Source: Asterias rubens
Lineage: Eukaryota
Assembly (NCBI RefSeq): GCF_902459465.1
Contig: NC_047065.1
Location: forward strand, 18,972,001 to 19,036,000
Reading direction: 5' to 3'
Length of the DNA stretch: 64,000 nt
Shown here: positions 3,001 through 58,933 of the stretch, in pieces
Layout: each line of letters begins with the position of its first letter
Position numbering within the stretch: the first letter of the stretch is position 1
The notes under the pieces: generated by a model
What the model was told of the DNA's origin: nothing
The model's database searches: none
Seen by the model: the letters and a program-made list of their open reading frames with translations, nothing else
Translations under genes and position numbers: made by a program

Positions 3001-3208
3001 ATCCTTCCTACTCACAAACGTCTTGAGAATATCTGATGGATCCTCTTCAAGAAGGTTCTGAAGTGTCTCCTGCGGGACTGGTGGTGATGTTGTCTTCCGT
3101 TTTGCCTGAGGTTTGGATGGAGAAGTTAACGAATCATGACCACCTTCTCTCCCTTGCCGCCGGGTGTCATTCGTAACGCCATTGCCCGGGACGAAGGTTG
3201 AAGCATTA
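1..3208 (-). CDS. ZNFX1: ZNFX1-like gene A, large coding exon (partial; continues beyond the left edge): N-terminal helical domain and SF1 helicase
   Basis: Manual translation. Acceptor tttaacAG ends at 3209; the frame has codon starts at multiples of 3 and is open to base 1. It contains NFRDIPIFP, YLDVQFRLLREDF, Walker A QGPPGTGKT (about 1580-1605), VVCYTNHALDQFLEG, VEEAAEVLEAH, LIGDHQQL, QHRMRPEIS and QITILTTYLGQ. It is missing from the ORF track because no stop falls inside the window. Confidence 0.93.
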
Positions 3209-19481: not shown

Positions 19482-20384
19482 AGGCACCGGACACTATTTG
19501 GTAATTACTCAAAATAGTTGTCAGCATATAACGAGCAATGAAGAGATTCAATGTTCAATAATAAACGTTTATTCCATACTCTTGTTGAAAAAAAATACAA
19601 TTGTTGATAGTATACAAATATTGACTGCTTCGAGTGCTATGGTTAAAACTATGACTCCTGAGGTGATCCCCGGAGCGTTCTATTTTCCTGAGGCAAAGCC
19701 GAGGGGAAATAGAACGCTACGGGGATCACCGAGGAAGTCATAGTGTTAACCATTGCACGAGTAAAAAGCAGTCAATATTTGTTTTATAACTCCCCAAACA
19801 TTTCTCTAAAAGCTGTACTATTATTATTAAGTACAGACCTGAATGCTACAATCCACGGACGACGCGAATACAGATTGCAAAAACTTTTACTATACTTTGC
19901 TGCATGTAGTGTCGTGCAATCCAAAATGGTAACAGACTATTAATTTATCATCCTCGTACACGCAACGGACGTCTGGGTACTGCACGCCGTGTGCTAGTCT
20001 TCGGACTAGCGCACGGTAAACCGACGCACTATCACACGGCCGTCGTCTAGCAAAACTAAGACATGTCATGTGATGCGCTCTAAACCAATGAGCAGGCAGA
20101 ATACTTGTGAGGGGTGTTATAATATACATTATTGTGATAAACGACTGCCTCTGAAGTGACATGGTTTTCCGAGGAGTTAATTACTCACTCAAATAATAAA
20201 AACTTCAGCTGAAGCCTTCTATTCATGCATTTGGAAGCACAAAAGCTAATGCAACACGGGTGTTTTTTCTTTGATTATTTTCGTCAAAATTTTTGGACTA
20301 TATGACCCCAAATGCTCATGGGTTATGATTTATATTTGGGTACACCTAGTGATGACATTAACTAAATAATCCAGTGTCCAGTGC
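19482..20384. mobile_element. K1-like MITE in the gene B intron, interrupted by a nested insertion containing a hairpin
   Basis: ttaaaggcaccggacac start and gtgtccagtgcatttaa end. Non-K1 sequence at about 19560-20110. Confidence 0.6.
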
Positions 20385-20424
20385 ATTTAAACCGATCTTC
20401 CATTTCACTTATTTCACCATACAG

Positions 20425-23400: not shown

Positions 23401-25759
23401 TGACTCGATGAGCAAGTCGAACCTACACGAGGCTGACTTCTTGGCAGCTTTCTGCAAGTACATTATACAGCAGGGGCAGTACCAACCATCGCAGATCACT
23501 ATCCTAACTACGTATGTTGGTCAACTCTTTAACTTCAGAAAGCTCTTGAAACGTTCTGTGTTTAGTGGTGTGCGGGTCTGTGCAGTCGACAACTTCCAAG
23601 GAGAAGAAAATGACATCATCTTGTTATCTTTGGTCCGTAGCAATCAGGAAGGTCAAATTGGTTTTCTGAAGGTATCTAACCGAATGTGCGTGGCGTTGTC
23701 CAGAGCCAGACATGGCTTTTATTGTATAGGCAATTTTCAAGCTCTTGCTCATGGGAGTGCACTTTGGAGTGATATCGTTCATGAAGTAACAACTAAAGGA
23801 ATACTGGGGAAACACTTGGAATTGGTTTGTCATAATCACCCTGAGAAAATGTCCCGGGTACGCATGAAGGAAGACTTTTTGAACGTTGCTGAGGGAGGTT
23901 GCAACAAGCCCTGCGAGTACCGACTCAACTGTGGTCACAGTTGCACCATGTTATGCCATCCGACCGATCTCGACCACAAAGAATTCAAGTGTATGAAGTC
24001 CTGTAATAAGGTACTGATTTGTGGACATAAATGTGATCAGCTATGCTTCAATAACTGTGGCAAATGCAATACCAAAGTAAACAAGACGTTACCATGCGGG
24101 CATCAGAAGAAGATTCCGTGCTATCAGAATCCAGACTCGGCCACTTGCAAAGAACAATGCACCGAAAGACTTGCCTGTGGACACATATGCCAGAAGTTAT
24201 GCGGCCAAGAGTGTACTGTCCTCTGTGTTAAAACTACCTTTCGCAGCAACTGGCCTTGTAAACACATGGTGGGCGTAAAATGCAGCGATGGTCCGGAGGA
24301 CTGTCCAGAGCCATGCACAGCTGTGCTGAAATGTTCTCACGTGTGTACGGGCACTTGCGGCTCCTGCACACGAGGTCGGCTGCATAAGCAATGCTCTAAG
24401 AGTTGCGGTCGCACTTTAGTCTGCGGGCATGCATGTGATGCCCTGTGCACGAAAAACTGCCCTCCATGCAACAAGAAGTGTCATAATAGGTGTGTCCATA
24501 GTATATGCCCAAATCGCTGTGGCGAACCATGCAAGCCTTGTCAGGAGCCATGTGCCTGGCAATGTCGCCACCACGAGTGTCGCAAGAAATGCAGCGAGGT
24601 TTGTGACAGGCTACCATGCAACATTCCTTGTAATAAGAGGCTCAAGTGCGGTCACCCTTGTATTGGTCTTTGTGGGGAGCCATGTCCAAAGAAATGTCGT
24701 GAATGTGACAGAGAAGAGGTGACAACTGTTGTGTTTGGACCGGAAGACGAACCAGATGCTCGATTTGTTGAGCTTGAAGATTGTAAACACATCGTGGAAG
24801 TGGGAAGTCTTGACCATTGGATGAGTTTACAGACTGAGAAAGGTCAGATAAAGTTAAAGGTTTGTCCGCTTTGCAAAACTCCAATTCGGCGCAATCTGCG
24901 CTACGGTAGCATCGTAAACGCTGTACTCAATGACATAGAAACCGTCAAGGCTCGTATGTTTGGGGACAGAGTGGCCATTGCAACCAAACGACGGCAGGTA
25001 GCTCGCAGTGTTTTTCAACAGAGAAGCTCTATACCAAACGGGGTCGCCGATGACTTTAAAGAGCAGATGGAATCCCAGCTAAGCCTTGGGGAACTGACCT
25101 GCATTGAGAACAAGTTAAATATCCTGGTTGCCATAGAAAAGGCAAAGAAAAGAGCAGAGGATACAGATTGCAGGTTCGAAAAGGAGAAAAAGCAAATGAA
25201 ACAAGACCTCGTGCAATTGCAGTATTGGCTGCTGAAACCTCGCATGTATCTCAGCGATCAAGAGTTAGATGATTGCAGCAACGAAGAACATCGCCTCTCA
25301 CTGTGTCTTAGTCTGTTCCAAGTTAAAAGCAGGCTCCCACCTTCAGAGTTAAAGAGTGCAACCTTAAAGATTGCCGAAGATTTACTGTTGGGCGGAAGGG
25401 CTTTGGAGGAGAACAGCAGGAAGACTGTGCGAACTTTTTTGAACGAGTTGAAGAGAAAACATACTCCTCTGTGCATATCAGACGAAGAGCGAGTGATGAT
25501 CTTAAAAGCTATGGATCTTACGAAAGGCCACTGGTTCAAGTGTCCCAATGGTCACGTTTACGCGATTGGAGAATGTGGCGGGGCTACTGAGGAATCCACC
25601 TGTCCCGATTGCGGTGCAAACATTGGGGGTCTCGGCCATCGACTGGACTCGAGAAATGCACTGGCGTCTGAAATGGACGGGGCTACGCATCCATCGTTTG
25701 GAACAGTTGCTAACAACATGAACAATTTCGACCTGCTCAACGTTCCTGATGATATCTAG
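20425..25759 (+). CDS. ZNFX1: ZNFX1 gene B, large coding exon: helical N-domain, SF1 helicase, about 10 NF-X1-type fingers, RING-like finger, helical region, RZ finger
   Basis: Intact ORF with QGPPGTGKT, VVCYTNHALDQFLEG, VEEAAEV, LIGDHQQL, QHRMRPEIS, VDNFQGEENDIILLSLVRSN, NRMCVALSRAR, EDCKH...CPLC and GHWFKCPNGHVYAIGECGGATEESTCPDC. Acceptor catacAG at 20423-20424. Spliced product about 1843 aa. Confidence 0.96.
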
Positions 25760-42314: not shown

Positions 42315-45300
42315 TGATCCAAGCGGGGGTTATCAAAGATGGCGGAGAAATCAAAGTGACGCTCCTCAAACCTCAGGGCGGTACCAAGGTCAAGTTCAAG
42401 TTCAGCGCAGGTCGACTGTGCGTCCGATCCCAGAGGCAGAATTGCAGAAACTATTAAGAGAACAACCAATAAACATACTGTCTTGTCTAGTGAGTAAGAA
42501 GGGTGAATGGTCATCTTTATTAAACCAAAACATTTTCAGTGATGATCTAGTTATCCTTACACTGCGTGTGTTATACTGCATTTGTGATATAGACTCTGTT
42601 CAGGATGCCAGATTAAACTTAAATATAATATTTGATCTGCTAGCATCCTCTTGCTTTCTCAGCAAACATTTGTCGAGGTATTTAGTTTCTGTAACCGAGA
42701 AGATGCAACTGGGTGAAGATGGTAATGAAAGCATAGGTCTTAATGTTAACATGATGTTGAAAGTACTGAGTGTATACTTGCAGCATAAACCAAATGGTTA
42801 TGGAGAGATGGCAGTAGTATTGATTCTTCTTGATAAGTTGACGTCGTCACCAGCATTTGTTAGTCAGGCTTATTTGATGATTGAGGTGCAGAAACTAAAA
42901 GAAAGTTTTCATATCCTGGAAGAGTCTCAGCAAACCAAGCAAACAGTGAAGGTTAAACCACCACCAAACAACTTCAGAGATATTCCAATCTTCCCCGACA
43001 GCTCAGAAATTAGGACACCGACGCAGCCATTCCTACGAAAGAACATCATTCATGGAAGATATCAAGACGTGGAGCATTATCTTGATGTGCAGTTCAGGTT
43101 GCTGAGAGAGGACTTTGTGGCACCGCTACGGGAAGGTATCATAGAGTTTCTCTCTGTGACAAACAGTCGCCATCAAGATATTCGGGTGTACCGCAATGTC
43201 ACTATTCAAAGTAAGAAGATGGGGAGACGTAGTCTTCAGTACACCGTGAAGTTGGACGTCAACGGTCTCAAACAGATTAACTGGGGAAAGCGTTTCCTAT
43301 ATGGTTCATTTGTCTGCCTTACACAAGACAAGTTCCAGCACATCATCTGTGCGTCTGTGGCAGATAGGAACGAAAAGGACTTGAAAAAAGGTCTTGTTGA
43401 TGTTTGTTTTCTTACCGAGTGTAGTAGCACGCCTACAGGTACCTTTGTCATGGTTGAATCAGTTGCTTTCTTTGAACCCTATCGACACGTCTTACTAGGG
43501 CTACAACGAATGATCAGCGACGATTTCCCCTTTGAAAGGTACATCGTGAATGTTTTCTCTTTTGTTAGAACACCCAAGTATCTGAGTGGAGAGTGCTCTG
43601 ATGTGTATGACCTACGATCATTGGTTGTTGAAACTGATCAGGTCTTTGAAGATGAGGGTCTGACTGAAACCTTCGTAAATGCAACCTGTGTTTCGATTTT
43701 AGATCCACAAAGTTGGCCGACTGCAGAGGCCTTACATCTTGATGAGTCACAGAAGGCAGCTGTGCAGGCAGCATTGACGAAGGAGTTTGCCATCATCCAA
43801 GGTCCACCAGGAACGGGGAAGACTTACATTGGTCTCAAAATCATCGAATTACTTCTGTACAATTTACTTACGACAACAGATGCATCTCCGATTCTTGTGG
43901 TGTGCTACACGAACCATGCTCTCGACCAGTTTTTGGAGGGAGTTCTACGTTTTGGTGAGAGGAATCTGGTTCGTGTTGGACGCCAAAGCAAAAGTGAAGT
44001 GCTTAAATCTTTTAAGTTTTCGTCTCTCAAAAAACAGCTTGGAAGACATCACCCTATGAAGGACATACAGAAAGAAAAAGAACTCAGGGCAATCACATCG
44101 AGGCTACAATATACACTTTTAAGTGTAGCTTTTGCTAAAACTGTCGTATATAAAGCAGAGACACTACAACCATTCATGACTGATGACACACAAAGAACAC
44201 TTTTTGAAAAATTCAAGACTGAGAAGGATCCAACAGCAAACCTTCTGAACTGGCTGTTTGTAGTTGATATCGAAGGTGAAACAGATCGACCAGATTGTTT
44301 AGATTCAAATCAAGACCAGGATAAGTTTATAGACGTAGAAGATGAAAGCAATCGGATACAGCAAGAACGCCAAGCCGAGGACGAAGCCGGCTTCAGTTTT
44401 TTTGACGCGCAACGTAAGCAACAGGAACATTCCGTTTTAAGACGAAATGCAGCATACAGCAGTGAATGCGAAAAGCGATGTGGTAATTCAGGATATAATC
44501 TTCAGGAAGAACTTCAGAAGGATGACATGATGTCTGAAACAGAAGTTTCTAGAGTCACAAATGTGTGGAGTCTGACGTTAAGCGACCGTTGGCGGCTTTA
44601 CCGACTCTGGGTGAACAGGTACATTGAGGAGCAGGAGGAGTTGCTCTCGAAATATCGCAGGAGTTATGACAGCCTTTCAAAGGAAGTTGAAACTATAAAT
44701 GCAAGCGTCGATTTAGAAGTTCTCTCAAAAGCAAGGGTAATTGGAATGACGACAACAGGTGCGGCCAGATGTCAGTCGATGTTGCAGCTTCTTGGTCCCC
44801 GTATCGTGATAGTGGAAGAGGCTGCTGAAGTTCTTGAAGCTCATATCATCACCACCCTGACTGCAAAGTGTCAGCATCTCATTATGATTGGAGATCATCA
44901 GCAGTTGAAGCCAAACCCAACAGTCTATCGCCTGGCTAAGGTCTTCAAAATGGATACCTCTTTGTTTGAACGGATGATCAACAATGGCGTACCTTGTCAA
45001 ACACTAACCCATCAGCATCGTATGCGTCCTGAAATCTCAAAACTCATGAAGAAACATTTTTATAAGAATCTTCATGACGATGAGTCAGTGAAGGGTTTCG
45101 ATGACATCAAAGGAGTGGCACATAACATGTTTTTCATTGATCATACTAAGCTTGAAGATGGATCAGGCGATGACAACAAAACCAAATCCAACCATCATGA
45201 GGCTGAGGTCCTTGTCGAGTTGTGTAGGTACTTGTTGCATCAAGGATACCGGCCCAAACAGATTACCATTCTAACCACGTACTTGGGTCAACTCTCCACC

Positions 45301-47325
45301 TTCAAGAAACTTATGGATAAAGAGACCTTTGAGGGAGTTCGGGTGTCTGTGGTTGACAATTTCCAGGGAGAAGAAAATGACATCATACTTTTGTCTTTGG
45401 TTCGAAGCAACAAAGAGGGCTCCATTGGGTTCCTGAAGACTTCGAACCGTGTATGTGTGGCCTTGTCTAGAGCTCGCATGGGTTTCTATTGCATAGGTAA
45501 CGGCACCATCTTGAAGAAAACACAGATCTGGCAGGATATCATTGGCACTCTTGAAGCTGAGAATCAAGTTGGTTCGACACTGCAGCTTGTCTGTCAAAAT
45601 CACCCTGGCACAGTGGCTGAAGTTGCCTCAGCGGAAGACTTCAGATTCAAGGTTCCGCTGGGAGGTTGCGGGAGGCCGTGTGAGTTCACGCTTGCGTGTG
45701 GCCACCGTTGTGAATCATCCTGCCACCCGTACGACTGTGATCATACCACGTACAAGTGCAGAGTTCGATGCACACAGTTATGCAAAAGGGGCGAACATTC
45801 TCGTAACATTGAATGCTTTGAATCTGACAACCCCTGTAAAGAGATGGTGTTGAAGTTAACACCCAAGTGCGGTCATGAATCACAAGTAATGTGTGACGAT
45901 TTTGAGTCGGCCGATTGCACCGTTCCATGTACTAAGAAAATCACATGTGGACATTCATGTACAAACCTATGTTGGCAAGAGTGCACATTAGCATCATCAT
46001 GTACAGTAAAGGTTACGAGAACCTTAAGACAATGTCGTCATAAATTTGTCACGGAATGCTCCGGAAAAAAATATTTGGCAGAATGTCCTCATGAATGTGA
46101 CAAAATATTGAGCTGTGGACACAAATGTCCAAACAAATGCGGCAAGTCGTGTCCAAAAACAAAGCGGGATATAGTAGGCTGGCGTGTATCTGAGTACAAG
46201 AATTGCAATGATTTCTGCACAGAAAGGTGTGGAGATCAATTATCTTGTGGACATACATGTCCTAATAAATGTGGCGAACCATGTCCAAAAGCAGAAGTTG
46301 ATCCAAACTTTGGGGAATATCTTGAGCTTGAAGATTACCAGATTCCACTTATATGTACAGTCATGGTGAGCAAGAGGCTTCCTAGGTGTGGTCACACTGT
46401 TATTGAGGAGTGTTACCGGGATGTGAATTTGAGATCTTGCACAGTGATTTGTAACAAGGAGTTGCCGTGTGGTCATCGATGTAGTCTGACATGCAGCGAA
46501 CCATGTACATGCTTACTAAGTGTCAAGAAGACGCTACAACCTTGTGGCCATTCTTTCCAGATTCCCTGCAACAAGACGGACGATCTTAACAAATGTACCA
46601 AGAAATGTCCGAAGTTATTAACATGTGGGCATCGGTGTCCTAATAACTGTGGAGATCCATGCCCAGGAGGAGCTGACCATAACCCAAGCTCAGCTCAAAT
46701 TAACAATGTAGTAGCAATTGTTTGTCAGCGTTCGGTAATGAAGAAACTACCTGGATGTGGCCACAGTTTGGCCTTGCCTTGTTTCAAAGACGTCGAGTCA
46801 GTTGCATGCTTAGAAAAGTGCACTGAAATTCTACCATGTAAACACAATTGCCCCAACAGGTGCGGCGAGCCATGCCCAACAACTACCGATGAGGGTGACG
46901 ATTACAGTTTGTCTGACAACAGACAACCCTTTGCAATGAAATGCCAAGAAGGTGTCACCAAAAAGCTAGTTTGTGGCCACATCGTAAGAATGCCATGCTT
47001 TCAGAACAACAAATTGCTGTTATGCCCCAAACCCTGTGAGAACATTCTGTCATGTGGTCACCGATGCTCCAGAAAATGCGGCGAGGCGTGTCTTAGTGGA
47101 GGTCACCATGCAGAGTCGGAGAGCGAAAACGAAGGGGAGACACTCTGTTCTGGTGCGGATGCTGAGGTAGAACTGCCATCGTGGAAATGCCAAGAGTCTG
47201 TCTACAAAATGTTACCTAAATGTGGTCATTTTGTAAAACTGCCATGCTGCAAAAAAGCAACAACTGCGATATGTCCAGAAAGTTGCCAAAGGGTTTTTCC
47301 TTGTGGTCACAAGTGCCCCAAATAG
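42315..47325 (+). CDS. ZNFX1: ZNFX1-like gene C, large coding exon up to an in-frame TAG (helicase and about 17 zinc-finger units)
   Basis: Acceptor tttacAG at 42313-42314, in frame with ORF 42418-47325. All SF1 motifs present (QGPPGTGKT, VEEAAEV, IGDHQQL, VDNFQGEEND, VALSRAR). About 1845 aa when spliced to copy 2. Confidence 0.93.
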
Positions 47326-48372
47326 TGCGGAGAAGTGTGTCTGACTCCAGAAGAATGCAAAGCAGTGGTTAAGAAGAGCCTTCCGCTTTGTGGCCACGTT
47401 GTTGAAACTTGGTGTCAAAGGAACATCGACTTAATTAAGTGCACAGAAGACTGTGAAAAGGTGTTACCCTGTGGTCATGTATGTTCCAACACCTGCAGCA
47501 GGCCTTGCAAAGCTGAATGTTCAGAACCATGCAGCCATCGACTACGTCGATGTGGTCATAGATGTCCTGGTGAATGCGGTGTTTGCTTAGCATCTTCATA
47601 TCACGAGCTATGTGACAGTAAATGTGAGAAACCGCTCATCTGCGGCCACATCTGCAAAAGTGCATGCGGAAAATGTTCAGAGGACTGCGATGATTGTGAA
47701 CCTAGCTCTACGACGAAAGAGAGTCTCGATACGGGCTCATCATCAGCGGATGCCGAGGACTTTCAACAGTGCAGACATAACACTAAAAAGAGTCAACTTT
47801 TCCCACATGCCTGTACCTTACCTTGCAGTAAAAAATTGCAGACACGTGCGCACAACTGCAATCATTTTTGTATTGGTGTCTGCAACGAGCCATGCCCTCC
47901 ATTTTGTTTAACTTGCAACAAAAATAAAGTAGTTGCATCTTTACCCCAGCAAACTTGTCGTCGAGGTGACACGTTCATCTACCTCCCAGACTGCAACCAC
48001 CTCTGTGAGACACGGTTTCTCGACAAAATGATGGCAGGTTTCAGAAGTTCATCTGACTGCGTTCAGGTACGTTCTCCAACATGTCCCAAATGTGACCGGC
48101 CAATACGCAAGTGTCAGCGATATCAAGACTTACTTAAGGTTATCGATGAGTCAATTGACTCGGCGAGAAAACAAGACGCAAGAAGTAAACCGAGGAACAC
48201 CACTCGTGACGTCAGCAGATCCGCCATTGTTGTCGGAAGTTGGATGAGATGTCCAAAAAGTCACGTGTTCAATCACAAACGGACTACAAGCTCGCATGAC
48301 AACAGAGACAACAAAATTGTACTTTGTCAAATGTGTAGGCAACTTTTTTCTAACATCTCACCCAGTACTTAG
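47326..48372 (+). CDS. ZNFX1: In-frame continuation of gene C past the TAG: about 6 more fingers, RING-like finger, degenerate RZ-like finger
   Basis: Same frame as 42418, with no further stop for about 348 codons. LPDCNHLC...CPKC and GSWMRCPKSH...CQMC. Whether it is translated is unknown. Confidence 0.7.
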   Translation, partial: CGEVCLTPEECKAVVKKSLPLCGHVVETWCQRNIDLIKCTEDCEKVLPCGHVCSNTCSRPCKAECSEPCSHRLRRCGHRCPGECGVCLASSYHELCDSKCEKPLICGHICKSACGKCSEDCDDCEPSSTTKESLDTGSSSADAEDFQQCRHNTKKSQLFPHACTLPCSKKLQTRAHNCNHFCIGVCNEPCPPFCLTCNKNKVVASLPQQTCRRGDTFIYLPDCNHLCETRFLDKMMAGFRSSSDCVQVRSPTCPKCDRPIRKCQRYQDLLKVIDESIDSARKQDARSKPRNTTRDVSRSAIVVGSWMRCPKSHVFNHKRTTSSHDNRDNKIVLCQMCRQLFSNISPST

Positions 48373-49483
48373 ATTTTGCAACGTGACTGGTTCAGAGCGG
48401 GTCACACGAGGTCTTCCATACCCCTTCCACGTGACGTCACACACATAAAAAGCGCCCTCACTGGGATCAAAGGAGGCAAATGATTTGAAGATAGCTGTGC
48501 GTACAAAAATGTGCGCATTTTACAAGGGTCACATTGTTACTAGAAAGCAGCGCGAGCGTGACACACTCTACCATTAGCAACTAATGGACAGTACTAAACC
48601 CGCAGCAACCAATCATTTACTGCTTTTATACTCGTGCTCTTTTATAACAAATTGCAGCACTCGAAACAGCAAAAAAATACACGATTAACATAGATAGGGG
48701 TCAATAAATAAAACAAATTTTACAACAGAAGCGCAACTTGCGCCTATCCTGGCCGCTTTTTGGGGAATCCAAACATACAAATAGGACTCGACTCTAAAAA
48801 ATAATGTTCAATATTATGTTGGACGACAACAATATTGATCGTTGCTGAAATTCACAAAAATACTTTCAATCAATAAGGACAAGTTCAATTAAACAAATTT
48901 TGATTGTGTAGGAAAATCCCTGTTACGTCATCACTAATGTGACGCTTTGTTCAGCGAGGAGCTATAACAAAGAAAACCTCCACACACGACGTCAAAGTAC
49001 TAGTTAATTTGTCATTATGACGTACGCCGTCAACGGCAGTATAGTGTTCCTAGTTTTCAAAACGTTTAGGGTGGGCTTGATTTTTTAATCGATAGTTACT
49101 ACAGTTTCAAAAGTGTACAAATATCTTACTTATCTCAAATAATAAACAAACGTATTATAAACAAGTCTAAATAGCATGCCAGTTATTATTATTACTATTT
49201 TTTTTTTGCTCAGACAATTTAACGTTTCACTTGTATTCACACTTTCATCCGCAAGTTTCTGAAATGTACAGTGTATACAAAACAAAACTTTAGTCTCAAT
49301 CACCACCTTTTTGGATTTTGTGTACACAGGTCTAGTACACTTAGAATTTGATGGCCCTACTTCGTAGTGTTGTTTTAATATCTACAACACAAGGGATATA
49401 TTGTCAAGACAATAATTATTGACAACATTGAAGGCACCGGGAAATATAGTTTAAATTTTTTCAAACATAGAGTATTATGTTAA

Positions 49484-49862
49484 AGGCAGTTGACACTATT
49501 GGTAATTGTCAAAGATTAGCTTTCACAGTTGGTGCATCTCAACATATGTATAAAATAACAAACCTGTGAAAATTTGAGCTCAATCGGTCATCGAAGTTGC
49601 GAGATAATAATGAAAGGAAAAAACACCCCTGTCACACTAAGTTGTGTGCGTTCAGATGGTTGATTTCGAGACCCCAAGTTCTAAACCTGAGGTCTCGATA
49701 TCAAATTCGTGGAAAATTACTTCTTTCTCGAAAACTATGGCACTTCAGAGGGAGCCGTTTCTCACAATGTTTTATACCATCAACTTCTCCCCATTACTCG
49801 TCACCAAGAAAGGTTCTATGCCAATAATTATTTTGAGTAATTACCAATAGTGTCCACTGCCT
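49484..49862. mobile_element. K1 MITE, full length
   Basis: TTAA|AGGCAGTTGACACTATTGG ... CCAATAGTGTCCACTGCCT|TTAA. Confidence 0.85.
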
Positions 49863-49866
49863 TTAA

Positions 49867-50407
49867 GTCACACTAAAACGACTTTTTAGTAATTGTTTGT
49901 AACGATTTATATGTTTAAAAACTAGAAAGTTGTTTGAGTGGTTGATTCCTCCTATACCGCTTAAGTGACGTCAATTGAGGCAGACTTTGCCTTCATGCGT
50001 AGAGTAAACACACGTGCAAAGTACATGCACATCCAAGTCGTGAGTTTTTTTTTTCTTCTTCTTGCATTTTCCGGCAACGCCGACCAAATGTATTGCTGCT
50101 GGATGCAGCAAACCAACTAAAGGTGTGGTCAGTCTGCATGGCTGGTCAGACTCACAATAGCAACAGTGCCCAGTGGTCCGGTCCGACGTCTTTTTCAGTG
50201 CTGTGCAGCATTTTCTCTTCAAATATCGCGCCTCGATTGACGTCACAAACAGCGCCGTCTCGGGTCGGGCCTGTTCTTAAATTTGTAAATAAGATAATAA
50301 CTAATTTTGTAGAACCTTCGTTAACTGTTTATTCACATTCCACTCATCAAAACACATATATTAGTGACAAAAGCTTTATTTTGACAAAATACCACTTCCA
50401 GGTGACT
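49867..50407. mobile_element. K4 element, second copy, with a longer THAP-like remnant
   Basis: Arms homologous to 11925-12473. (T)PTKCIAAGCSKPTKGVVSLHGW starts at 50077 (ACG in place of ATG). Confidence 0.65.
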
Positions 50408-51212
50408 TGAAGCTTGAAAATGATTGTACCCAACAAGTATACAAATATTGTGTTCGAAGGCATTCAGATCGTTTACTTAAAGGCACTGGGCACGTTTGGT
50501 AATAAGTGTCAAATACCAGTATTCTCACTTGGTGGGCATACCCAAACTTAAAGGGACACGTTGTCCTGGATCGGGCGAGTTGGTCTATAAAACATCTTTC
50601 TCATTCTAACCATATGCATTTCATGACAAACGGTTTTCAAATTACTTTTCATAGACCAACTCGCCCGATCGAAGACAACGTGAACCTTTAAGCATAAATA
50701 ACAAACTGATTGTTATGAACATTCGAATTAAGAGCGAGTTTAATATTTTGGGTATTAAAATCGGTCACAGCTCTGAGTGCTGATTTCATAATAACTAATG
50801 AATTAAGACTTATAGTAAAGAAGTTTATCTCTTTGATACGTAATTGTAGAGTGATGTTAGCATTATGAGATACTCCTGCCTTGCTTGAACGTTGTTATTT
50901 TGTTTTTATAGTCTTAAACAATTATTAGATTTAATTGTGGCTCGAATAAGGAACGGCAGTTGGTGAATGGATCATGCATGGGAAGATCTTTCATTTTACT
51001 GATCAGTTTTAATTTTGCGAGAAGTGGTTTTGTTTTGTTAATGTACGTATAGTTTCTGTGACTTCTGATTGTTACACACAGACGTGCCTATATATGGCAA
51101 GCATGTACAGAGAGGATTTTCCCCTTTTTCTTTTACAAGAGACTCAATGATTTTGTATGTTAATACAAAATGTAGCACTAGTTTCATTTTCATAGAGAGT
51201 TTTGCGTTTTGA

Positions 51213-51712
51213 NNNNNNNNNNNNNNNNNNNNNNNNNNNNNNNNNNNNNNNNNNNNNNNNNNNNNNNNNNNNNNNNNNNNNNNNNNNNNNNNNNNNNNNN
51301 NNNNNNNNNNNNNNNNNNNNNNNNNNNNNNNNNNNNNNNNNNNNNNNNNNNNNNNNNNNNNNNNNNNNNNNNNNNNNNNNNNNNNNNNNNNNNNNNNNNN
51401 NNNNNNNNNNNNNNNNNNNNNNNNNNNNNNNNNNNNNNNNNNNNNNNNNNNNNNNNNNNNNNNNNNNNNNNNNNNNNNNNNNNNNNNNNNNNNNNNNNNN
51501 NNNNNNNNNNNNNNNNNNNNNNNNNNNNNNNNNNNNNNNNNNNNNNNNNNNNNNNNNNNNNNNNNNNNNNNNNNNNNNNNNNNNNNNNNNNNNNNNNNNN
51601 NNNNNNNNNNNNNNNNNNNNNNNNNNNNNNNNNNNNNNNNNNNNNNNNNNNNNNNNNNNNNNNNNNNNNNNNNNNNNNNNNNNNNNNNNNNNNNNNNNNN
51701 NNNNNNNNNNNN
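51213..51712. other. Assembly gap (500 N)
   Basis: Run of exactly 500 N, a placeholder length. Confidence 1.
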
Positions 51713-52083
51713 ATTCGATTTGGTATGTCAAAGATCAGTCTTCTCAATTGGTGTATCTCAACAGCATGCATAAAATAACAAACCTGTGAAATTTTGAGCT
51801 CTATTGGTCGTCGAAGTTGCGAGATAATAATGAAAGAAAAAAACACCCTTGTCACACGAAGTTGTGTGCGTTAAGATGGTTGATTTCGAGACCTCAAATT
51901 CTAAATCTGAGGTCTCAAAATCAAATTCGTTGAAAATTACTTCTTTCTCGAAAACTGTGGCACTTCAGAGGGAGCCGTTTCTCACAATGTTTTTTACCAT
52001 CAACTTCTCCCCATTACCCGTCACCAAGTAAGGTTTTAGGCTAATAATTTTTTTGAGCTAATTACCACTAGTGTCCACTGCCT
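51713..52083. mobile_element. K1 MITE abutting the gap
   Basis: K1 body ending ccactagtgtccactgcct|ttaa. Confidence 0.8.
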
Positions 52084-52682
52084 TTAAGGTTTACAAAAAG
52101 CATCAACTTTTACATGACTAGTATTGGAATGTCAAACTATCTTTTTCTATCAAAAGAAAATGAAATACACTGTATATACGAAGCTATTTCCGAAGGTATT
52201 AGTTTTCTCTTTAAACAGTTCAGTAGACTAAAGGGTAATCTTTTTGATGTTGTGTTAAAGAAACTATAAGAAATTTCCTTGTTTTGTAAACAAATAATGC
52301 AAAAGTTTCACCTATAACTTCTCGATACAAGTTCTTGTATTGTATAATACCTGTTTTTGCAAAGTGATCTTACGATGAAAAGCCAATGTAAAAATAACAT
52401 TCATTACATAATGACCATGATCTTCGTTGTACAACCATACCACGCGTTACCTTAACAGTGCGAATAGTGCCCCACTCTCTATTTTCGCATTGAGTGTTGC
52501 TCCAATAAGAGCTATCAATTACCTTTAAATCAAGATGAAGGCTAACCTTGAATAAGTACGTATACGATCACGTGACCATCACGTGACCCATCACAGATCC
52601 ATTATTTGAACCAATTACGTAAATCTTAACTATAGAAAAAAGCTCAAGATCTGAGCTAAATAACAACATAAAATCATCCTTC

Positions 52683-53042: not shown

Positions 53043-54786
53043 TCATTCAAAGTATTCCATATCATCACTTGAAGATTCTGATTGACAGTCAGAAAAGCAA
53101 TCAGGGCAAAGTGCGCAATCTTCTAAATCATCTGATGCTTTGTCTTGACAGAACACATGACCTTCCGGACACCTCATCCACCCACCAACAGCAAAAGAAA
53201 GCTTAACAAATCGGTCTTCGTTACAGTTCTCTCTGGCTATATCCACTGACTCTCTGATTGTCTGAAGGACGTTTTCATAACGTGGACATGTACGGATTGG
53301 TGTCTGGCATTTAGGGCACAGAGCTGGTTGGATCTGCACACAGCCTGTTCCAGAGGTCTGGAAACCTGCAAACATTTCATCAAGAAACTGTGTTTCACAA
53401 AGATGTCTACAGTCTTTAAGGTAGATGAACGTTTCCTTTGGACGGATAGGTCCCGGAGGATATTTGTCAGCGATAAACTGTTTGTGACAGATACGACAAA
53501 CAGGTGGACAGGGTTCACCACAAACACCAAGACATAAATGATTGCAACGAAGTCTTTGGATGCATGGAAGGTTACAGGAAGTGGTATGTGTTTTGCGCTG
53601 ATGCTTACATTTGAGACTCTGCGTAGATATTTGAGGTAATCCCCTTGGCGACTTGTTGCAAAATTTGTGTGTTGGACAGACGTCATGTCCGCACAATTCC
53701 GAGCACCTATGTCCACAAAGAAGAATAGCGCCACAATTGTTATTGCAGAATGTATGTGTTCTACCAGGTCCTGCGCACGAACCACATGAACCGGGACATT
53801 TGTGACCACAACGAAGTACATGAATGCACGGTTCCTGGCAACTAGTGATAGCTGTACAATCAGATGCTTCCCAGCATGGCAATTTGATAACATGACCGCA
53901 TGGCGGAAGGGTCTTTTCCACACACTCGTCACACTGTTCTGACTCAAGACACGTCTCACCACATTCATTTGGGCATTTATGACCACACTTCATTATCTTC
54001 TCACATGGTTTTGAACATTCAGCGGACCCTGCTTTCTTGTGGCACGGAAGATTCATAAAATGGAAACACTCAGGTAGCTGCTTGTATACGGTGACTTGAC
54101 ATTTCTGTTTTACAAATTCGTTTTCATTCATTTCCTCTTCATCGTCACTGGATGTACATTCTTCGTTCGGGCACGGCTCCCCACATTTGTTCTCGCATTG
54201 ATGACCACATGAAAGAATCTTCTCACAGGGCTTCGGGCATACCAGTGATTCAACGCTTTTATAGCATGGACTTTCTATGACGTGACCGCAAAAAGGTATC
54301 TTTTTGTTCACAAACTGTTCTGACATAGAGGTCATCTTGTTCAGACGACCTGTTGCCATCATCATCCCAGTCACAGTAAGTTTCGTTCTTCTTTCGAGTG
54401 CTCTCTGTTGGGTCGTCTTCGCCATCCGCCGGGCAGGGTTCACAACATTTATTGGAACATGAATGGCCACATGGTAACATTTTCTGACATTTCTTCACAC
54501 ATTGATAGGAGTTGACATCTTGGTAGCAAGGGAGCCGAGCAGAATGTTCACAAGATGGCAGCTTTCTGTTAACTCTCAGTTTGCATTTGCAGGGGACGCC
54601 ACATTTATCTTTGCACCGGTGACCACATGATAACTCTTTGTTGCAGGTCTCTTTGCAAGTTAATGACGTAATATCAGCATGACATGGCACCGATTCAGTA
54701 TGATCACACCCAGGAAGCTTTTTATTTGTGATTTGGGTACACACCATAAACAGTATGCCGGCAACAATAATATAACAATAAACTTC
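53043..54786 (-). pseudogene. ZNFX1: Disrupted 3' part of gene D: zinc fingers, RING-like finger and RZ-like finger downstream of a TAA and across a frameshift
   Basis: ORF 54259-54747 is in the same frame as the main ORF. The finger pattern then continues in a different frame (ORF 53043-54470: NKKIPFCGH ... LKDCRHLC...CPKC ... GGWMRCPEGH...CPDC). Confidence 0.75.
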
Positions 54787-57700
54787 TTAGTGAAGCTGTA
54801 TGTATTCACCATAGGTTGGGTCCACTGTTTCCTTTGGGCACGGTTCGCCACATTTATTAGGACAGGGATTGCCGCAAGGTAATGACCGCTCACACTTCTC
54901 TTTGCAAAATGCTTCATAATGCCGCATAATCTTGGCGTCATCTAATCTTTCCCTTGTACAGGACATACCGCAGTACCGAGAGCAACGATGGCCACATTCC
55001 AACAACTTTTCACATAGATGACGCGGCGTGGAGTCGGGGTTCTTAGCACAATCCATCAGGACGTCATGGCCACACTTGGTAACGTGTTTAGAGACCTTGA
55101 CAGTACAGTAAGTAGTGCATTTAGCACCACACGCCCCTTTACATGCATGTCCACATGACAGTGTTCTAGGACATGGTTCTGTACAAGTGATTGACTCATA
55201 CCAACGACATTGAACCTGGATAACATGACCACACTCTGGCATCGATATAGAAACCTTGACAATACAAGTAGAACACGAATCTCCGCACGCCTTCCTACAT
55301 GGATGGCCACATGGCAATGATCTAGGACATGGTTCGGTACAAGTAACTGAATCAAACATTTCACATTCAACCTGAATAACATGACCACACTTTGGCATCA
55401 GTTTCTGTAGATTTCTCGAGCACGGTTCGCATTTCAAGTGGCATTTTAGAGGACACATGTGTTTCCTTCTACACATTTTTGAGCAGGGCTCTTTACATTC
55501 GTACTTTTCGTGGCATAAATCAAAGGGATGGCAGTGTAATTTGCATATGTGATTACATGGAAGCCTGTTTCCACATGGCTCGCCACAACCTCCGTCTTGA
55601 ACCTTCTCCTTGAAATCTCTGGCCGACGCTACCGCTGTTACTACTAAATGGTTTTGACAAACCAATGCAAGCGAGGAGCTAATTTTCTTCTCATCTTCAA
55701 GGGTTCTTAGTATGCTACTCCAGATAGAAGACTTTCTCAGGATGTTGGCGTTGCCAATACAGTAGAAACCCATGCGAGCTCTAGACAAGGCAACACAGAC
55801 ACGGTTTGAAGTCTTCAGGAACCCGATGGAGCCCTCTTCGTTGCTTCGAACCAAAGACAAAAGTATGATGTCATTTTCTTCTCCCTGGAAATTGTCAACC
55901 ACAGACACCCGAACTCCCTCAAAGGTCTCTTTATCCATGAGTTTCTTGAAGGTGAAGAGTTGACCCAAGTAGGTGGTTAGAATGGTAATCTGTTTGGGCC
56001 GGTATCCTTGATGTAACAAGTACCTACACAACTCGACAAGAACCTCCGCTTCATGCTGATTGGACTTGGTTTTGTTGTCATCACCCTCATCTTCAAACTG
56101 ATTGTGATCAATGAAAAACATGTTATGCGCCACCCCTTTGATGTCATCGAAACCCTTCACTGATTCATCGTCATAAAGATTGTTATAAAAATGTTTCTTC
56201 ATGAGTTTTGAGATTTCAGGACGCATACGATGCTGGTGGTTCAATGTTTGACAAGGCACGCCGTTGTTGACCATTCGTTCAAACAAAGAAGTATCCAAGT
56301 TGAAGCCCTTGGCCAGGCGATAGACTGTTGGGTTTGGTTTCAGATGCTGATGATCTCCAATCAGAATGAGATGCTGACATTTTGCAGTCAGAGCGGTGAT
56401 GATATGAGCTTCAAGAACTTCAGCGGCCTCTTCCACTATCACAATACGAGGACCAAGAAGCTTTAACATCGACTGACATCTGGCCGCACCTGTTGTAGTC
56501 ATTCCAATCACTCTTGCTTTTGAGAGAACTTCTAAATCGACGCTCGCCTTTATAGCTTCATATTCATTTGAAAGGCTGTCATAACTTATGCGGTAACCCG
56601 TCAGCATCTCCTCTTGCTCTTCAATGTACTTCTTAACCCAGAGTCTGTAAAGCCGCCAACGATCGCTTAACGTCAGACTCCATACATTTGTGACTCTAGA
56701 AGCTTCTCTATCGGACATCATGTCGTCCTTCTTAAGTTCTTCTTTTGGGGTGGTATCCAAATTCATACCACAGCGTTTCTCACACTCAATGCTGTATGCT
56801 GTAATTTCTTCTTCATCGTCAGAACTACTTGATTCATCTTCATCATCATCATCCTGTTTCTGTTTGCTGTCATCATCTACGCCAATGGACTTATCGTATA
56901 CTTCATAAGAATCTGTCGAGTCAACTACGTTCAGCCATTTCAGGAGGTTGGTTGTTGGTTCTCCTTGTCTCTTGATATTATTTTGAAAACCTGTTCGATT
57001 TTTGTCGCTCATGTAATAGATAAGCGTCTCGACTTTAAGTATGGCCGTTTTTGCACAAGCTACATCTGAAAGTGTAGATTGAATTTCCAATTTTGTTCGA
57101 TGCAGTTTTTTTTTAGCATTTTTTTCACGCTGTATTTGCTTCAACCTAAACTCCCTGGGAAGTTTCTTTTTTTCTTTGAGATTCTTTTCTCCCAATGCAT
57201 CACTTTTGCTTCGGCCTCCAACACGAACTAGGTTCTCCTCACCAAAATTTAAAACTCCCTCCAGAAACTGATCCAGCGCGTGGTTTGTATAGCACACCAC
57301 AAGAATTGGAGATGCATCTGGAGTTTTAGGTGTATTGAAGAGAAGTAATTCGATGATCTTGAGACCAATGTAAGTCTTCCCCGTTCCTGGTGGACCTTGG
57401 ATGATGGCAAACTCCTTCGTCAACGCTGCCTGCACAGCTGCCTTCTGTGACTCATCAAGATGTAAGGCCTCTGCAGTCGGCCAACTTTGTGGATCTAAAA
57501 TCGACACGAAGGCTGCATTTTCAAAGGTTTCAGTCAGACCCTCATCTTGAAAGACCTGATCAGTTTCAACAACCAATGGTCGTAGGTCATACACATCAGA
57601 GCAGTCTTCGCTCAGATACTTAGGTGTTCTAACATTAGATGAAACGTTCACAATATACCTTTCAAAAGGGAAGTTGTCACTATCCATCCGTTGTAGCCCT

Positions 57701-58933
57701 AGTAAGACGTGTCGATAGGGTTCAAAGAAAGAAACTGATTCAACCATGACAAAGGTACCGGTAGGCGCGTTACTAGACTCGGGAAGAAAACAAACATCAA
57801 CGAGACCTTTTTCCAAGTTCTCCGTATTCCTATCTGCCACAAACGCACATAACAAGCTCTTGAAGTTGTCTTTTGAAAGACAGACAAATGAACCGTATAT
57901 CAAACGGTTTTCCCAGTTGATCCGTCTGAGACTCTTGACATCTAACTTCAGGGTGTACTGAAGACTACGTCTCCCCATCTTCTTACTTTGAAAGGTGACA
58001 TTGCGGTACACCCGAATATCTTGATGGTGACTGTTTGCCACAGAGAGAAACTCTATGATACCTTCTCGTAGCGGTGCCACAAAGTCTTCTCTCAGCAACC
58101 TGAACTGCACATCAAGATAATGCTCGACATCTTGATATCTTCCCTTTATGATGTTCTTTCGTAAGAATGGCTTTGTTGGTTCCCAAATCTCTGAGCTGGT
58201 AGGGAATATTTTGATATCTCTGAAGTTAACTTGTGGCTTGTTCTCTATTTTTTGTTTTGTTTGACCTGACTCGGCGACAGAATGATAGCACTTCTTCAGT
58301 TTCTGTACCTGGATCATGTAATTCTGACCTTCGTGATCGATGTCAGTACAATCTACCAGGGAAACAGCCTTCTCGAGAAGAATCAGAACCACGCCCATTT
58401 CACCATAAATAATTGGCTTGTGTTCAAGGAATACTTTCAGCAATTTAAAAATCAATCTGATGTTGTTTGCAAGGGTTGCACCATGTCCACTGTCATGATC
58501 CCGTTGGTTTTGTGTGGACAAACCTACTAAGTATCTCGTCAAATGTCTACTGAGAAACCCTTCAGACTCTATCATACTGAATACCATATAAACATCTTGC
58601 TTTACTTTTGGATCTACACTTAAATCACAAATACACGACAAAACACGGAGTATTAACGTCATTATATTACTATTGAATGAGTCTAGATTTAAAAGTGCCA
58701 ACCATTCGTGTTTTCTGCTCAGAAGCTTGGAGAGAACTTCTTGTGGACTGGCCGTCAGCAGTGTCTTGAGTTCTTCCTCTGACATTGAGGGCGCCTTGGG
58801 AGTCTGCTTTACTTGAACTTGACCTGTGTATGTCCCTGAACCAGAACAAAAGTCGCTCTGTCCCCGACGCCATTTAGTTTCTTCTACAGGGGTTGGAGGA
58901 CTGTTCGGGCTCGAGGTTGTTGCACCACTGGAA
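54787..58933 (-). CDS. ZNFX1: ZNFX1-like gene D, large coding exon up to an in-frame TAA (helicase and about 9 zinc-finger units)
   Basis: Acceptor gtttcAG at 58934-58935, in frame with ORF 54787-58785. SF1 motifs present, with motif III reading GDHQHL. About 1551 aa spliced. Confidence 0.9.

What the first reader, a model, noticed from the sequence alone, without database searches (positions are those of the whole stretch)
48060..48372. C and D have a compact RING-like/RZ-like tail lacking the helical spacer and the GECG motif
Seen: the distance from the RING-like CPxC to the RZ tryptophan is 219 aa in B, 49 in C and 42 in D (53043-53330). B has CPNGH-VYAIGECGG-ATEESTCPDC; C has CPKSH-VFNHKRTTSSHDNRDNKIVL-CQMC; D has CPEGH-VFCQDKASDDLEDCAL-CPDC. 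Established: the RZ finger shared by RNF213 and ZNFX1 is linked to non-canonical E3 activity, and the GECG cysteine is the proposed catalytic residue in RNF213. Inference: the C/D ancestor kept the zinc ligands but lost or rewired RZ catalysis, giving a decoy or a different ligase.
Basis: partly seen in the sequence, partly recalled or inferred. Interest (0 to 1): 0.7.

Follow-up and report, generated by a model that had tools for sequence, protein, structure and literature searches.

The report
Sea-star ZNFX1 copies with dead RZ tail
A sea-star-only branch of the antiviral helicase and ubiquitin ligase ZNFX1 keeps the zinc-binding skeleton of its second ligase domain but has lost every residue known to make that domain work, although the two copies flagged here are cut short before this tail.

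Summary
The window is Asterias rubens. The gap from the RING-like CPxC to the RZ tryptophan is exactly 219 aa in B, 49 in C and 42 in D. B has a canonical RZ finger (Pfam PF20173, 81-85 bits). The C and D tails get no RZ hit.

The compact tail is not debris. It defines a sea-star-specific ZNFX1 clade (100% support) in Asterias, Patiria and Acanthaster, 12 tails aligned. W, the C-x3-H and C-x2-C zinc ligands and the Z-RING ligands are invariant. The ~180-aa helical spacer, the GECG nucleophile, the general-base His and most of the ubiquitin-binding helix are gone.

Two 2025 preprints show that these are the residues human ZNFX1 needs for RZ transthiolation. RZ catalysis is therefore almost certainly lost. 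Any ligase activity left must come from the Z-RING, whose E2-contact Phe is Pro in 9 of 10 tails.

Caveat: in this genome C (TAG at 47323) and D (TAA at 54787, plus a frame change) stop upstream of the tail, and NCBI's models end there. Of six local clade copies only E, outside the window, is open through the tail. Expression could not be shown.

Similar degenerate RZ tails occur in paralogues of other animals. The scan lists this same stretch once more (s1-150626), not other DNA.

The parts
47968..48123 (+). Gene C Z-RING (Miz-type hemi-RING): DCNH ... CPKC, with the clade-specific extra Cys at H+2 and in PIRKCQRY
   Evidence: Translation. Alignments with human-numbered residues taken from the literature. 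AF2 model pLDDT is 90-95 here. RING and MYCBP2 structural hits.
48124..48189 (+). Gene C post-RING helix, the only remnant of the ~220-aa helical spacer
   Evidence: Alignment. Helix 116-139 in the AF2 model.
48190..48240 (+). Gene C short variable linker ending in the AIVVGS remnant of the RZ N-terminal helix
   Evidence: Alignments. Linker length varies among sea-star tails: CPxC-to-W is 42-62 aa.
48241..48336 (+). Gene C 'RZ-lite' zinc knuckle, W-M-R-C-P-K-S-H ... C-Q-M-C. It has no GECG loop and no downstream IGG-x2-H.
   Evidence: No PF20173 hit. Beta-hairpin plus short helix in the model.
48337..48372 (+). Gene C last 11 codons and the TAG stop
47323..47325 (+). In-frame TAG in gene C, 348 codons upstream of the end. 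The NCBI model P0197 ends here, so the tail is untranslated as assembled.
53277..53435 (-). Gene D Z-RING
53097..53180 (-). Gene D RZ-lite zinc knuckle, W-M-R-C-P-E-G-H-V-F-C ... C-P-D-C
   Evidence: D piece 3 (425 codons) is 96.7% identical to the intact A. amurensis orthologue P0002, with 4 nonsynonymous differences in the last 160 codons.
53043..53096 (-). Gene D acidic C-terminal extension and stop
54787..54789 (-). In-frame TAA in gene D, where paralogue E has Glu. The NCBI model P0196 ends here.
54320..54394 (-). Gene D frame change. About 90 residues (E residues ~1557-1645, one zinc-finger cassette) are missing.
   Evidence: tblastn of E on the window.
24758..24904 (+). Gene B Z-RING, for comparison. 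The E2-contact loop VVFGPE lies at 24722-24745.
24905..25531 (+). Gene B helical spacer (209 aa), absent from C and D
25532..25645 (+). Gene B canonical RZ finger with GECGG (25568-25582) and GGLGH
   Evidence: PF20173 at 81-85 bits. Matches the RNF213 RZ finger at E 1e-9.

Best explanation
The compact tail is the conserved C-terminal module of a sea-star-specific subfamily of ZNFX1-like helicases. It has four pieces: (i) an intact Z-RING (Miz-type hemi-RING), (ii) one ~22-residue helix, (iii) a short variable linker, and (iv) a truncated RZ finger ('RZ-lite'). RZ-lite keeps only the Trp and the four zinc ligands (C-x3-H ... C-x2-C), and the protein ends a few residues later.

The nucleophile Cys (human C1860), the general-base His (H1881) and most of the ubiquitin-binding helix (I1835) are absent. 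These proteins therefore cannot run the RZ transthiolation route, which in human ZNFX1 builds K48 chains and drives self-turnover. Whatever ubiquitin-ligase activity remains must come from the Z-RING alone, as proposed for C. elegans ZNFX-1 and as seen in human C1860A or RZ-deleted constructs. RZ-lite then serves as a structural or regulatory zinc cap.

Shown here: the anatomy, its conservation, the clade and the lost residues. Inferred: loss of transthiolation (strong inference) and retention of Z-RING activity (weak, about even odds). In this A. rubens assembly C and D carry premature stops upstream of the tail, so here the module is expected to be made from paralogue E and not from C or D.
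For: Spacing and motifs are exact.

Pfam RZ model (cut-off 27 bits): B 81-85 bits, E 10, Patiria 20, Acanthaster 18, C and D no hit. The partial hits cover only profile positions 9-39 of 54.

A profile search of 1.84 billion representatives found only 4 proteins at E<1e-30, all from sea stars.

On the helicase tree the clade has 100% SH-aLRT support, with at least 3 orthogroups in Valvatida. Its sister is a brittle-star paralogue with a long spacer and a degenerate RZ (support 90).

In 12 tails the invariant residues are the Z-RING C, H, C, C and W, R, C, H, V, F, C, C of RZ-lite. The position after HVF is C, Y, H, L or N, so the loop holds no conserved Cys.

Intact ORFs run through the tail in E (2080 codons), in A. 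amurensis P0002 (a 1992-codon exon) and in P0003.

Tail dN/dS is 0.20-0.49.

AF2 models of the E and C tails are confident (pLDDT 77.6 and 85.6) and share one topology. Their best structural match is the MYCBP2 RING plus linker helix (Z 5.7 and 6.4), followed by many RING domains.

Residue roles in human ZNFX1 come from 10.1101/2025.09.05.674436 and 10.1101/2025.10.14.682297.
Against: The E2-contact Phe (human F1575, whose mutation abolishes all E3 activity) is Phe in 48 of 60 other ZNFX1-like tails but Pro in 9 of 10 compact tails. Only a neighbouring Y, L or M remains. The linchpin position varies (Q, K, H, D, E). The Z-RING may therefore not bind the usual E2.

No expression evidence was obtained. 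The contig runs behave like DNA, and a raw RNA run from a related species gave about zero depth on both tails.

Five of six clade copies in this gene cluster are truncated or tail-less, which could mean the tail is dispensable.

All functional statements are transferred from human ZNFX1.
Confidence: 0.62

Rival explanations
1. The module has no ligase activity at all. With the RZ dead and the E2-contact Phe replaced by Pro, these proteins are E3-null helicases. They act as RNA binders, adaptors, or decoys or dominant-negative partners of the canonical copies (B and the chromosome-4 11.2-Mb ZNFX1).
For: F to P at the F1575 column in 9 of 10 tails, shared with the brittle-star sister. Human F1575A/N/E abolishes all activity. 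The other local copies are truncated before the E3 module or lack the tail, yet are still annotated as proteins.
Against: The Z-RING zinc ligands and the fold-defining residues (TFIYL, LD, CP.C, RY) are invariant across the clade. That is hard to explain for a dead domain. A hydrophobic residue (Y, L or M) is kept next to the Pro. RING domains commonly use Leu, Ile or Met for E2 contact (my own knowledge).
Confidence: 0.28
2. Catalysis was rewired rather than lost. A new nucleophile takes over a Cys-relay, as in MYCBP2. Candidates are the two clade-specific invariant cysteines in the Z-RING (at H+2 and in PI..C.RY) or the Cys after HVF.
For: Cys at H+2 is present in 10 of 10 compact tails and in 0 of 60 others. 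The second Cys is present in 10 of 10 against 11 of 60. The best structural neighbour of both models is the MYCBP2 RCR ligase, spanning RING, helix and the start of its Cys domain.
Against: The Cys after HVF is not conserved. The two new cysteines sit where RING site-I ligands would be, so a second zinc site is the simpler reading. Z of 5.7-6.4 is below the level the tool calls reliable. Resemblance of the Z-RING to the MYCBP2 RING is already known for canonical ZNFX1.
Confidence: 0.06
3. The C and D tails are only the untranslated remains of two recently dead genes, and their features have no present function in this animal.
For: TAG in C, and TAA plus a frame change plus a missing cassette in D. 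The NCBI models stop there. No RNA depth on either tail.
Against: This holds for C and D at most, not for the tail as such. E, the A. amurensis D orthologue and all Patiria and Acanthaster copies are open through it. Downstream of the TAG, C stays open for 345 codons. C departs from otherwise invariant columns only 3 times in 37, which is within the 0-3 range of the intact genes. The lesions are therefore recent, polymorphic or read through.
Confidence: 0.55
4. Gene-model artefact: an unrecognised downstream exon restores the helical spacer and a canonical RZ finger.
For: None found.
Against: A six-frame scan of the whole genome with PF20173 found only B and the 11.2-Mb gene above threshold, and nothing between C and D. 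tblastn of the B and Z tails on the window hits only the RZ-lite motifs themselves. Gene models from four species end at the same place.
Confidence: 0.02

Closest known systems
Human ZNFX1 (bi-catalytic E3: Z-RING/Miz domain plus RZ finger)
   Same: Same family and domain order: SF1 helicase, NFX1-type zinc-finger stalk, hemi-RING with C-x-H ... C-x2-C zinc site II, then a C-terminal W-x2-C-x3-H ... C-x2-C knuckle.
   Different: The ~220-aa helical spacer is cut to one helix. The GECG nucleophile (C1860), the base H1881, the C-terminal half of the RZ sandwich and most of the ubiquitin-binding helix are missing. F1575 is replaced by Pro. Two extra invariant Cys sit in the Z-RING.
C. elegans ZNFX-1
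   Same: A natural ZNFX1 without RZ catalysis. Naydenova et al. propose that it keeps ligase activity through the Miz domain alone.
   Different: The worm protein lacks the RZ domain entirely according to that paper. Sea stars keep its zinc knuckle under constraint. I did not examine the worm sequence here.
Engineered human ZNFX1 C1860A and the RZ-deleted E2BR fragment (residues 1462-1652)
   Same: Functional analogues: the transthiolation route is removed and only the Z-RING allosteric route remains (K63-biased chains, longer protein half-life).
   Different: Those constructs keep F1575. The sea-star tails do not.
RNF213 RZ finger
   Same: Same zinc-ligand spacing in the first knuckle. B's RZ finger matches it at E 1e-9.
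   Different: The compact tail gives no match to RNF213 at E<=10 and lacks equivalents of C4516 and H4537.
MYCBP2 RING-Cys-relay module (PDB 6t7f)
   Same: Best structural neighbour of both tail models, covering RING, linker helix and the start of the next zinc module (Z 5.7 and 6.4).
   Different: Z is modest. There are no equivalents of the two relay cysteines and no sequence similarity (14-17% identity). The resemblance is to the Z-RING in general.
Degenerate RZ tails in other ZNFX1 paralogues (Clavelina, Albula and Megalops, Dreissena, Blattella, Pocillopora, Amphiura)
   Same: W-x2-C ... H ... C-x2-C kept and the GECG loop lost; in most the protein ends soon after CxxC (Clavelina runs on ~70 aa).
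   Different: All but Clavelina keep a long spacer. They lie outside the sea-star clade wherever placed on the tree, which suggests separate losses.

Membership tests
RZ-type zinc finger (Pfam PF20173; RNF213/ZNFX1 E3 finger) | Scores at or above the Pfam gathering cut-off (27 bits) | tested here: not met
   C and D tails: no hit at E<=10. E tail 10 bits, Patiria 20, Acanthaster 18. B scores 81-85 bits.
RZ-type zinc finger (Pfam PF20173; RNF213/ZNFX1 E3 finger) | Four zinc ligands C-x3-H ... C-x2-C preceded by Trp | tested here: met
   Invariant in 12 compact tails, including C and D.
RZ-type zinc finger (Pfam PF20173; RNF213/ZNFX1 E3 finger) | Nucleophile Cys in the G-[ED]-C-G loop (ZNFX1 C1860, RNF213 C4516) | tested here: not met
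   The loop is replaced by a variable hydrophilic stretch with no conserved Cys.
RZ-type zinc finger (Pfam PF20173; RNF213/ZNFX1 E3 finger) | General-base His after I-G-G (ZNFX1 H1881, RNF213 H4537) and the C-terminal half of the beta-sandwich | tested here: not met
   The proteins end 3-20 residues after C-x2-C.
RZ-type zinc finger (Pfam PF20173; RNF213/ZNFX1 E3 finger) | N-terminal ubiquitin-binding helix (I1835) | tested here: inconclusive
   Only about 8 residues (SFAVG) align to its end. The model shows no helix there.
ZNFX1 / NFX1-type zinc-finger helicase family | SF1 helicase (PF13086/PF13087) plus ZNFX1 domain (PF25396) plus NFX1-type zinc-finger array | tested here: met
   Precomputed Pfam domains for E (P0001) and its orthologues. 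The clade nests inside echinoderm ZNFX1 on the tree.
Z-RING / Miz-type hemi-RING of ZNFX1 | Zinc site II ligands (human C1591, H1593, C1619, C1622) | tested here: met
   Invariant in all 70 aligned tails, including C and D.
Z-RING / Miz-type hemi-RING of ZNFX1 | E2-contact Phe (human F1575), mapped by its 16-residue spacing from C1591 | tested here: not met
   Pro in 9 of 10 compact tails against Phe in 48 of 60 others.
Z-RING / Miz-type hemi-RING of ZNFX1 | RING-like cross-brace fold | tested here: met
   pLDDT about 90. MYCBP2 RING at Z 5.7-6.4 and many RING domains at Z 3-3.9. The Foldseek hits are RING domains but not significant.
Z-RING / Miz-type hemi-RING of ZNFX1 | Binds an E2 and stimulates ubiquitin discharge | not testable with these tools
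   No E2 sequence could be obtained from allowed sources. The UQ_con scan gave only exon fragments, and the five inspected looked like other E2 types, none like UBE2D. No complex job was run.
MYCBP2-type RING-Cys-relay ligase | Two relay cysteines in a tandem-Cys domain | tested here: not met
   The RZ-lite loop holds no conserved free Cys. The resemblance is structural only.

The most novel reading that the evidence does not exclude
The retained zinc knuckle is not a leftover. It is a functional C-terminal cap that animals keep whenever a ZNFX1 paralogue gives up transthiolation (sea stars, a brittle star, a tunicate, elopomorph fishes, a mussel, a cockroach, a coral). In sea stars it sits next to a Z-RING that gained two invariant cysteines. 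Those either rebuild the missing RING zinc site I or form a new active centre. That would make this clade a distinct, naturally 'single-route' or re-engineered ZNFX1 ligase.
Probability: 0.12. Interest if true: 0.7.

Novelty: new variant of a known kind. Interest (0 to 1): 0.5.

Why it matters
ZNFX1 was shown only in 2025 to run two ubiquitin routes from one E2-binding site. The RZ route drives K48-linked self-turnover. The Z-RING route builds K63 chains that aggregate ZNFX1 and trap RNA. The sea-star clade is a natural experiment in which the first route was removed and kept removed across both sampled sea-star orders, in a multi-copy, fast-evolving family (whole-gene dN/dS about 0.4).

The clade offers ready-made proteins for three questions. 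Is a Z-RING-only ZNFX1 functional in immunity? What does the RZ zinc knuckle do apart from catalysis? How far can the E2-contact loop drift?

It also warns annotators. 'NFX1-type zinc finger-containing protein 1-like' covers proteins with quite different ligase equipment. In A. rubens most local copies, C and D included, are truncated before any E3 module or lack the tail.

Tried and rejected
Reads: the three contig runs cover the intergenic DNA as evenly as the genes, so they behave like DNA. The one raw RNA run is from a related species and gave about zero depth on both tails. This shows neither expression nor silence. Whether other individuals carry the TAG could not be read, because the table of differences was truncated.

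Second run search, with E's 3' end: only a marine metatranscriptome holding 12% of the words. Uninformative.

Complex prediction was not run. No E2 sequence was available from allowed sources. The UQ_con scan of the genome gave only single exons, and the five I inspected resembled other E2 types (UBE2C-, UBE2L3- and UBE2S-like among them), none UBE2D.

phmmer of the E tail against PDB sequences gave only weak rubredoxin-type CxxC matches. Foldseek against the PDB gave no significant hit.

Hidden exon: rejected.

The Cys after HVF as a replacement nucleophile: rejected, because it is not conserved.

P0003 as the orthologue of C: rejected. It is 56% identical to C and 51-55% to D and E.

C's orthologue was not found within 10 kb of the A. 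amurensis D orthologue.

Literature searches for sea-star or invertebrate ZNFX1 expansions found nothing relevant.

Full report
WHAT IS THERE. The window is from Asterias rubens chromosome contig C4 (18,972,001-19,036,000). Paralogue E is 100% identical to an NCBI A. rubens protein.

The window holds a tandem cluster of ZNFX1-like helicase genes:
- A: 1-3108, minus strand, cut by the window edge.
- B: 20381-25759, plus strand.
- C: 42418-48372, plus strand.
- D: 58785-53043, minus strand.

Three more copies (E, F, G) lie 16-63 kb beyond the window end.

I translated the tails and counted by script. All quoted motifs are present. Other ZNFX1 proteins have 196-310 residues there.

B IS CANONICAL; C AND D ARE NOT.
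- B scores 81-85 bits on Pfam ZnF_RZ-type (cut-off 27). It aligns with the RZ finger of RNF213 at E 1e-9, including GECG and the IGG-x2-H histidine.
- The C and D tails give no RZ hit even at E<=10. The E tail gives 10 bits.
- The Patiria and Acanthaster tails give 18-20 bits, and only over profile positions 9-39 of 54.
- The tail is therefore RZ-derived but fails the family threshold.
- A six-frame scan of the whole genome finds only two RZ fingers above threshold: B, and a 1816-aa canonical ZNFX1 at 11.2 Mb on the same contig.
- Nothing lies between C and D, and tblastn with the B and canonical tails finds no leftover spacer or RZ exon.

THE COMPACT TAIL IS A CONSERVED CLADE CHARACTER.
- The same tail ends intact proteins of A. 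rubens (E, a 2080-codon ORF), A. amurensis (P0002; its last exon is an unbroken 1992 codons), an unidentified ENA assembly (P0003), Patiria miniata (at least 4 genes) and Acanthaster planci (at least 3).
- A profile of the tail searched against 1.84 billion representative proteins gave only four hits at E<1e-30, all from sea stars.
- On a helicase-domain tree the sea-star clade has 100% SH-aLRT support and a long stem. It lies inside the echinoderm ZNFX1 group.
- Its sister, with support 90, is a brittle-star protein (Amphiura P0207) that keeps a long spacer but already has a degenerate RZ finger and the Phe-to-Pro change described below.
- The likely order is therefore RZ decay first, then deletion of the spacer on the sea-star stem.
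- In 12 aligned tails these residues are invariant: the four Z-RING zinc ligands, and W, R, C, H, V, F and the final C-x2-C of the knuckle.
- The loop between the knuckle halves varies in length and sequence. The position after HVF is C, Y, H, L or N.
- Pairwise dN/dS in the tail is 0.20 (D against its A. amurensis orthologue; few changes) and 0.47-0.49 (E against the D lineage). The whole-gene value is about 0.41-0.44.

WHAT WAS LOST, READ AGAINST THE LITERATURE. Two 2025 preprints dissect human ZNFX1.
- RZ finger: zinc ligands C1849, H1853, C1869 and C1872. The nucleophile is C1860 (the GECG Cys, shown by probe crosslinking and C1860K trapping). The general base is H1881. A preceding helix (I1835) binds ubiquitin.
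- This RZ route makes K48 chains and drives ZNFX1 turnover.
- Second module: the Z-RING or Miz domain. Its zinc ligands are C1591, H1593, C1619 and C1622, its E2 contact is F1575 and its linchpin is Q1623.
- The Z-RING binds the E2 for both routes. It has its own allosteric activity, which makes the K63 chains that aggregate ZNFX1 and trap RNA.
- C. elegans ZNFX-1 is said to lack the RZ domain and to rely on the Miz domain.

Against this map the compact tail:
- keeps all eight zinc ligands;
- lacks the nucleophile, the base, the C-terminal half of the RZ domain and all but about 8 residues of the ubiquitin-binding helix;
- lacks about 180 residues of helical spacer.

Loss of RZ transthiolation is a strong inference.

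IS THE Z-RING STILL A LIGASE? This is the weak step.
- In favour: the fold-defining residues are invariant.
- In favour: AF2 models of the E tail (pLDDT 77.6) and the C tail (pLDDT 85.6) give the same confident topology, namely RING, a long helix, then a beta-hairpin knuckle.
- In favour: for both models the single best solved neighbour is the MYCBP2 RING plus linker helix (Z 5.7 and 6.4), ahead of many RING domains at Z 3-3.9. These Z values are below the level the tool calls safe.
- Against: at the column of F1575, 48 of 60 other ZNFX1 tails have Phe, while 9 of 10 compact tails have Pro, with Y, L or M just before it. The linchpin position varies.
- I could not test E2 binding, because no complete E2 sequence was obtainable within the tool rules.
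- I put 'Z-RING-only ligase' and 'E3-null' at roughly even odds.

C AND D THEMSELVES.
- C has an in-frame TAG at 47323-47325, at a position where sister zinc-finger repeats have K or R.
- D has a TAA at 54787-54789 where E has Glu. It also has a frame change between 54394 and 54320, and lacks one ~90-aa cassette.
- The NCBI models P0197 (C, 1946 aa) and P0196 (D, 1551 aa) end at those stops. As assembled, neither tail is translated.
- The lesions look recent. C stays open for 345 codons after the TAG, and its tail departs from otherwise invariant columns only 3 times in 37, within the 0-3 range of intact genes.
- D's third ORF piece (425 codons, tail included) is 96.7% identical to the intact A. 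amurensis orthologue.
- G has a frame change in an acidic GAT/GAA loop, and NCBI's P0195 ends there. F has at least two frame changes near its Z-RING. A has no tail.
- Only E is open through the tail among the six local clade members. This is the birth-and-death pattern expected of a fast-evolving immune gene cluster. Some lesions could still be polymorphisms or assembly slips.

EXPRESSION. Not shown. The one reads call was uninformative, and a second run search found only a marine metatranscriptome with a small share of the words.

WIDER PATTERN.
- Degenerate RZ tails of the same logic (W-x2-C ... H ... C-x2-C kept, GECG gone, protein usually ending soon after) occur in paralogues from other animals.
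- These are the tunicate Clavelina (also with a compact spacer), the fishes Albula and Megalops, the mussel Dreissena, the cockroach Blattella and the coral Pocillopora.
- Those placed on the tree fall outside the sea-star clade, which suggests repeated loss.
- Conversely, Cyanophora (P0084) and probably a metagenomic protist (P0078, read by eye) combine a short spacer with a canonical RZ finger. Spacer loss and RZ decay are therefore separable.
- I found no paper describing any of this.

VERDICT. This is a new variant of a known kind, of moderate interest.

Noticed in passing
window 47323-47325: A single in-frame TAG splits gene C. It replaces the K/R position of a CP-x-[KR]-CGE zinc-finger repeat. 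NCBI's protein for C (P0197) ends exactly here, yet the frame stays open for 345 more codons.
   Followed up: partly
window 54787-54789 and 54320-54394 (minus strand): Gene D has a TAA where paralogue E has Glu. It also has a frame change and lacks one ~90-aa zinc-finger cassette. NCBI's protein for D (P0196) ends at the TAA, while the A. amurensis orthologue is intact.
   Followed up: yes
L020:6559-6571 (gene G); L021:7975-8140 (gene F); L014 ~8141 (end of gene A): G changes frame inside an acidic GAT/GAA loop. F has at least two frame changes near its Z-RING. A ends without any Z-RING or RZ tail. Only E of the six local clade members is open through the tail.
   Followed up: partly
window 47995-48003 and 48106-48108 (C); same columns in all compact tails: Two clade-specific invariant cysteines in the Z-RING. 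One is two residues after the zinc His (10 of 10 compact tails, 0 of 60 others, where the residue is hydrophobic). The other is in PI..C.RY (10 of 10 against 11 of 60).
   Followed up: partly
P0051, P0065, P0192, P0093, P0059, P0178, P0207: Degenerate RZ tails (zinc ligands kept, GECG lost, protein usually ends after CxxC) recur in ZNFX1 paralogues of a tunicate, two elopomorph fishes, a mussel, a cockroach, a coral and a brittle star.
   Followed up: partly
P0084 (Cyanophora paradoxa), P0078 (metagenome): A short, one-helix spacer (56 aa in P0084; short by eye in P0078) combined with a fully canonical RZ finger. The long helical spacer is therefore not universal in the family and may be an insertion of the animal lineage.
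   Followed up: no
window 49300-50700 and 51700-52100: Intergenic stretches between C and D reach read depths of 10^4-10^6 in every run, with many joints. They are high-copy repeats, presumably transposable elements.
   Followed up: no
window 53046-54320 versus 54790-58785, against L013: Synonymous divergence between D and its A. amurensis counterpart is 0.036 in the tail piece but 0.149 in the helicase piece. This suggests gene conversion among paralogues, or mosaic orthology.
   Followed up: no
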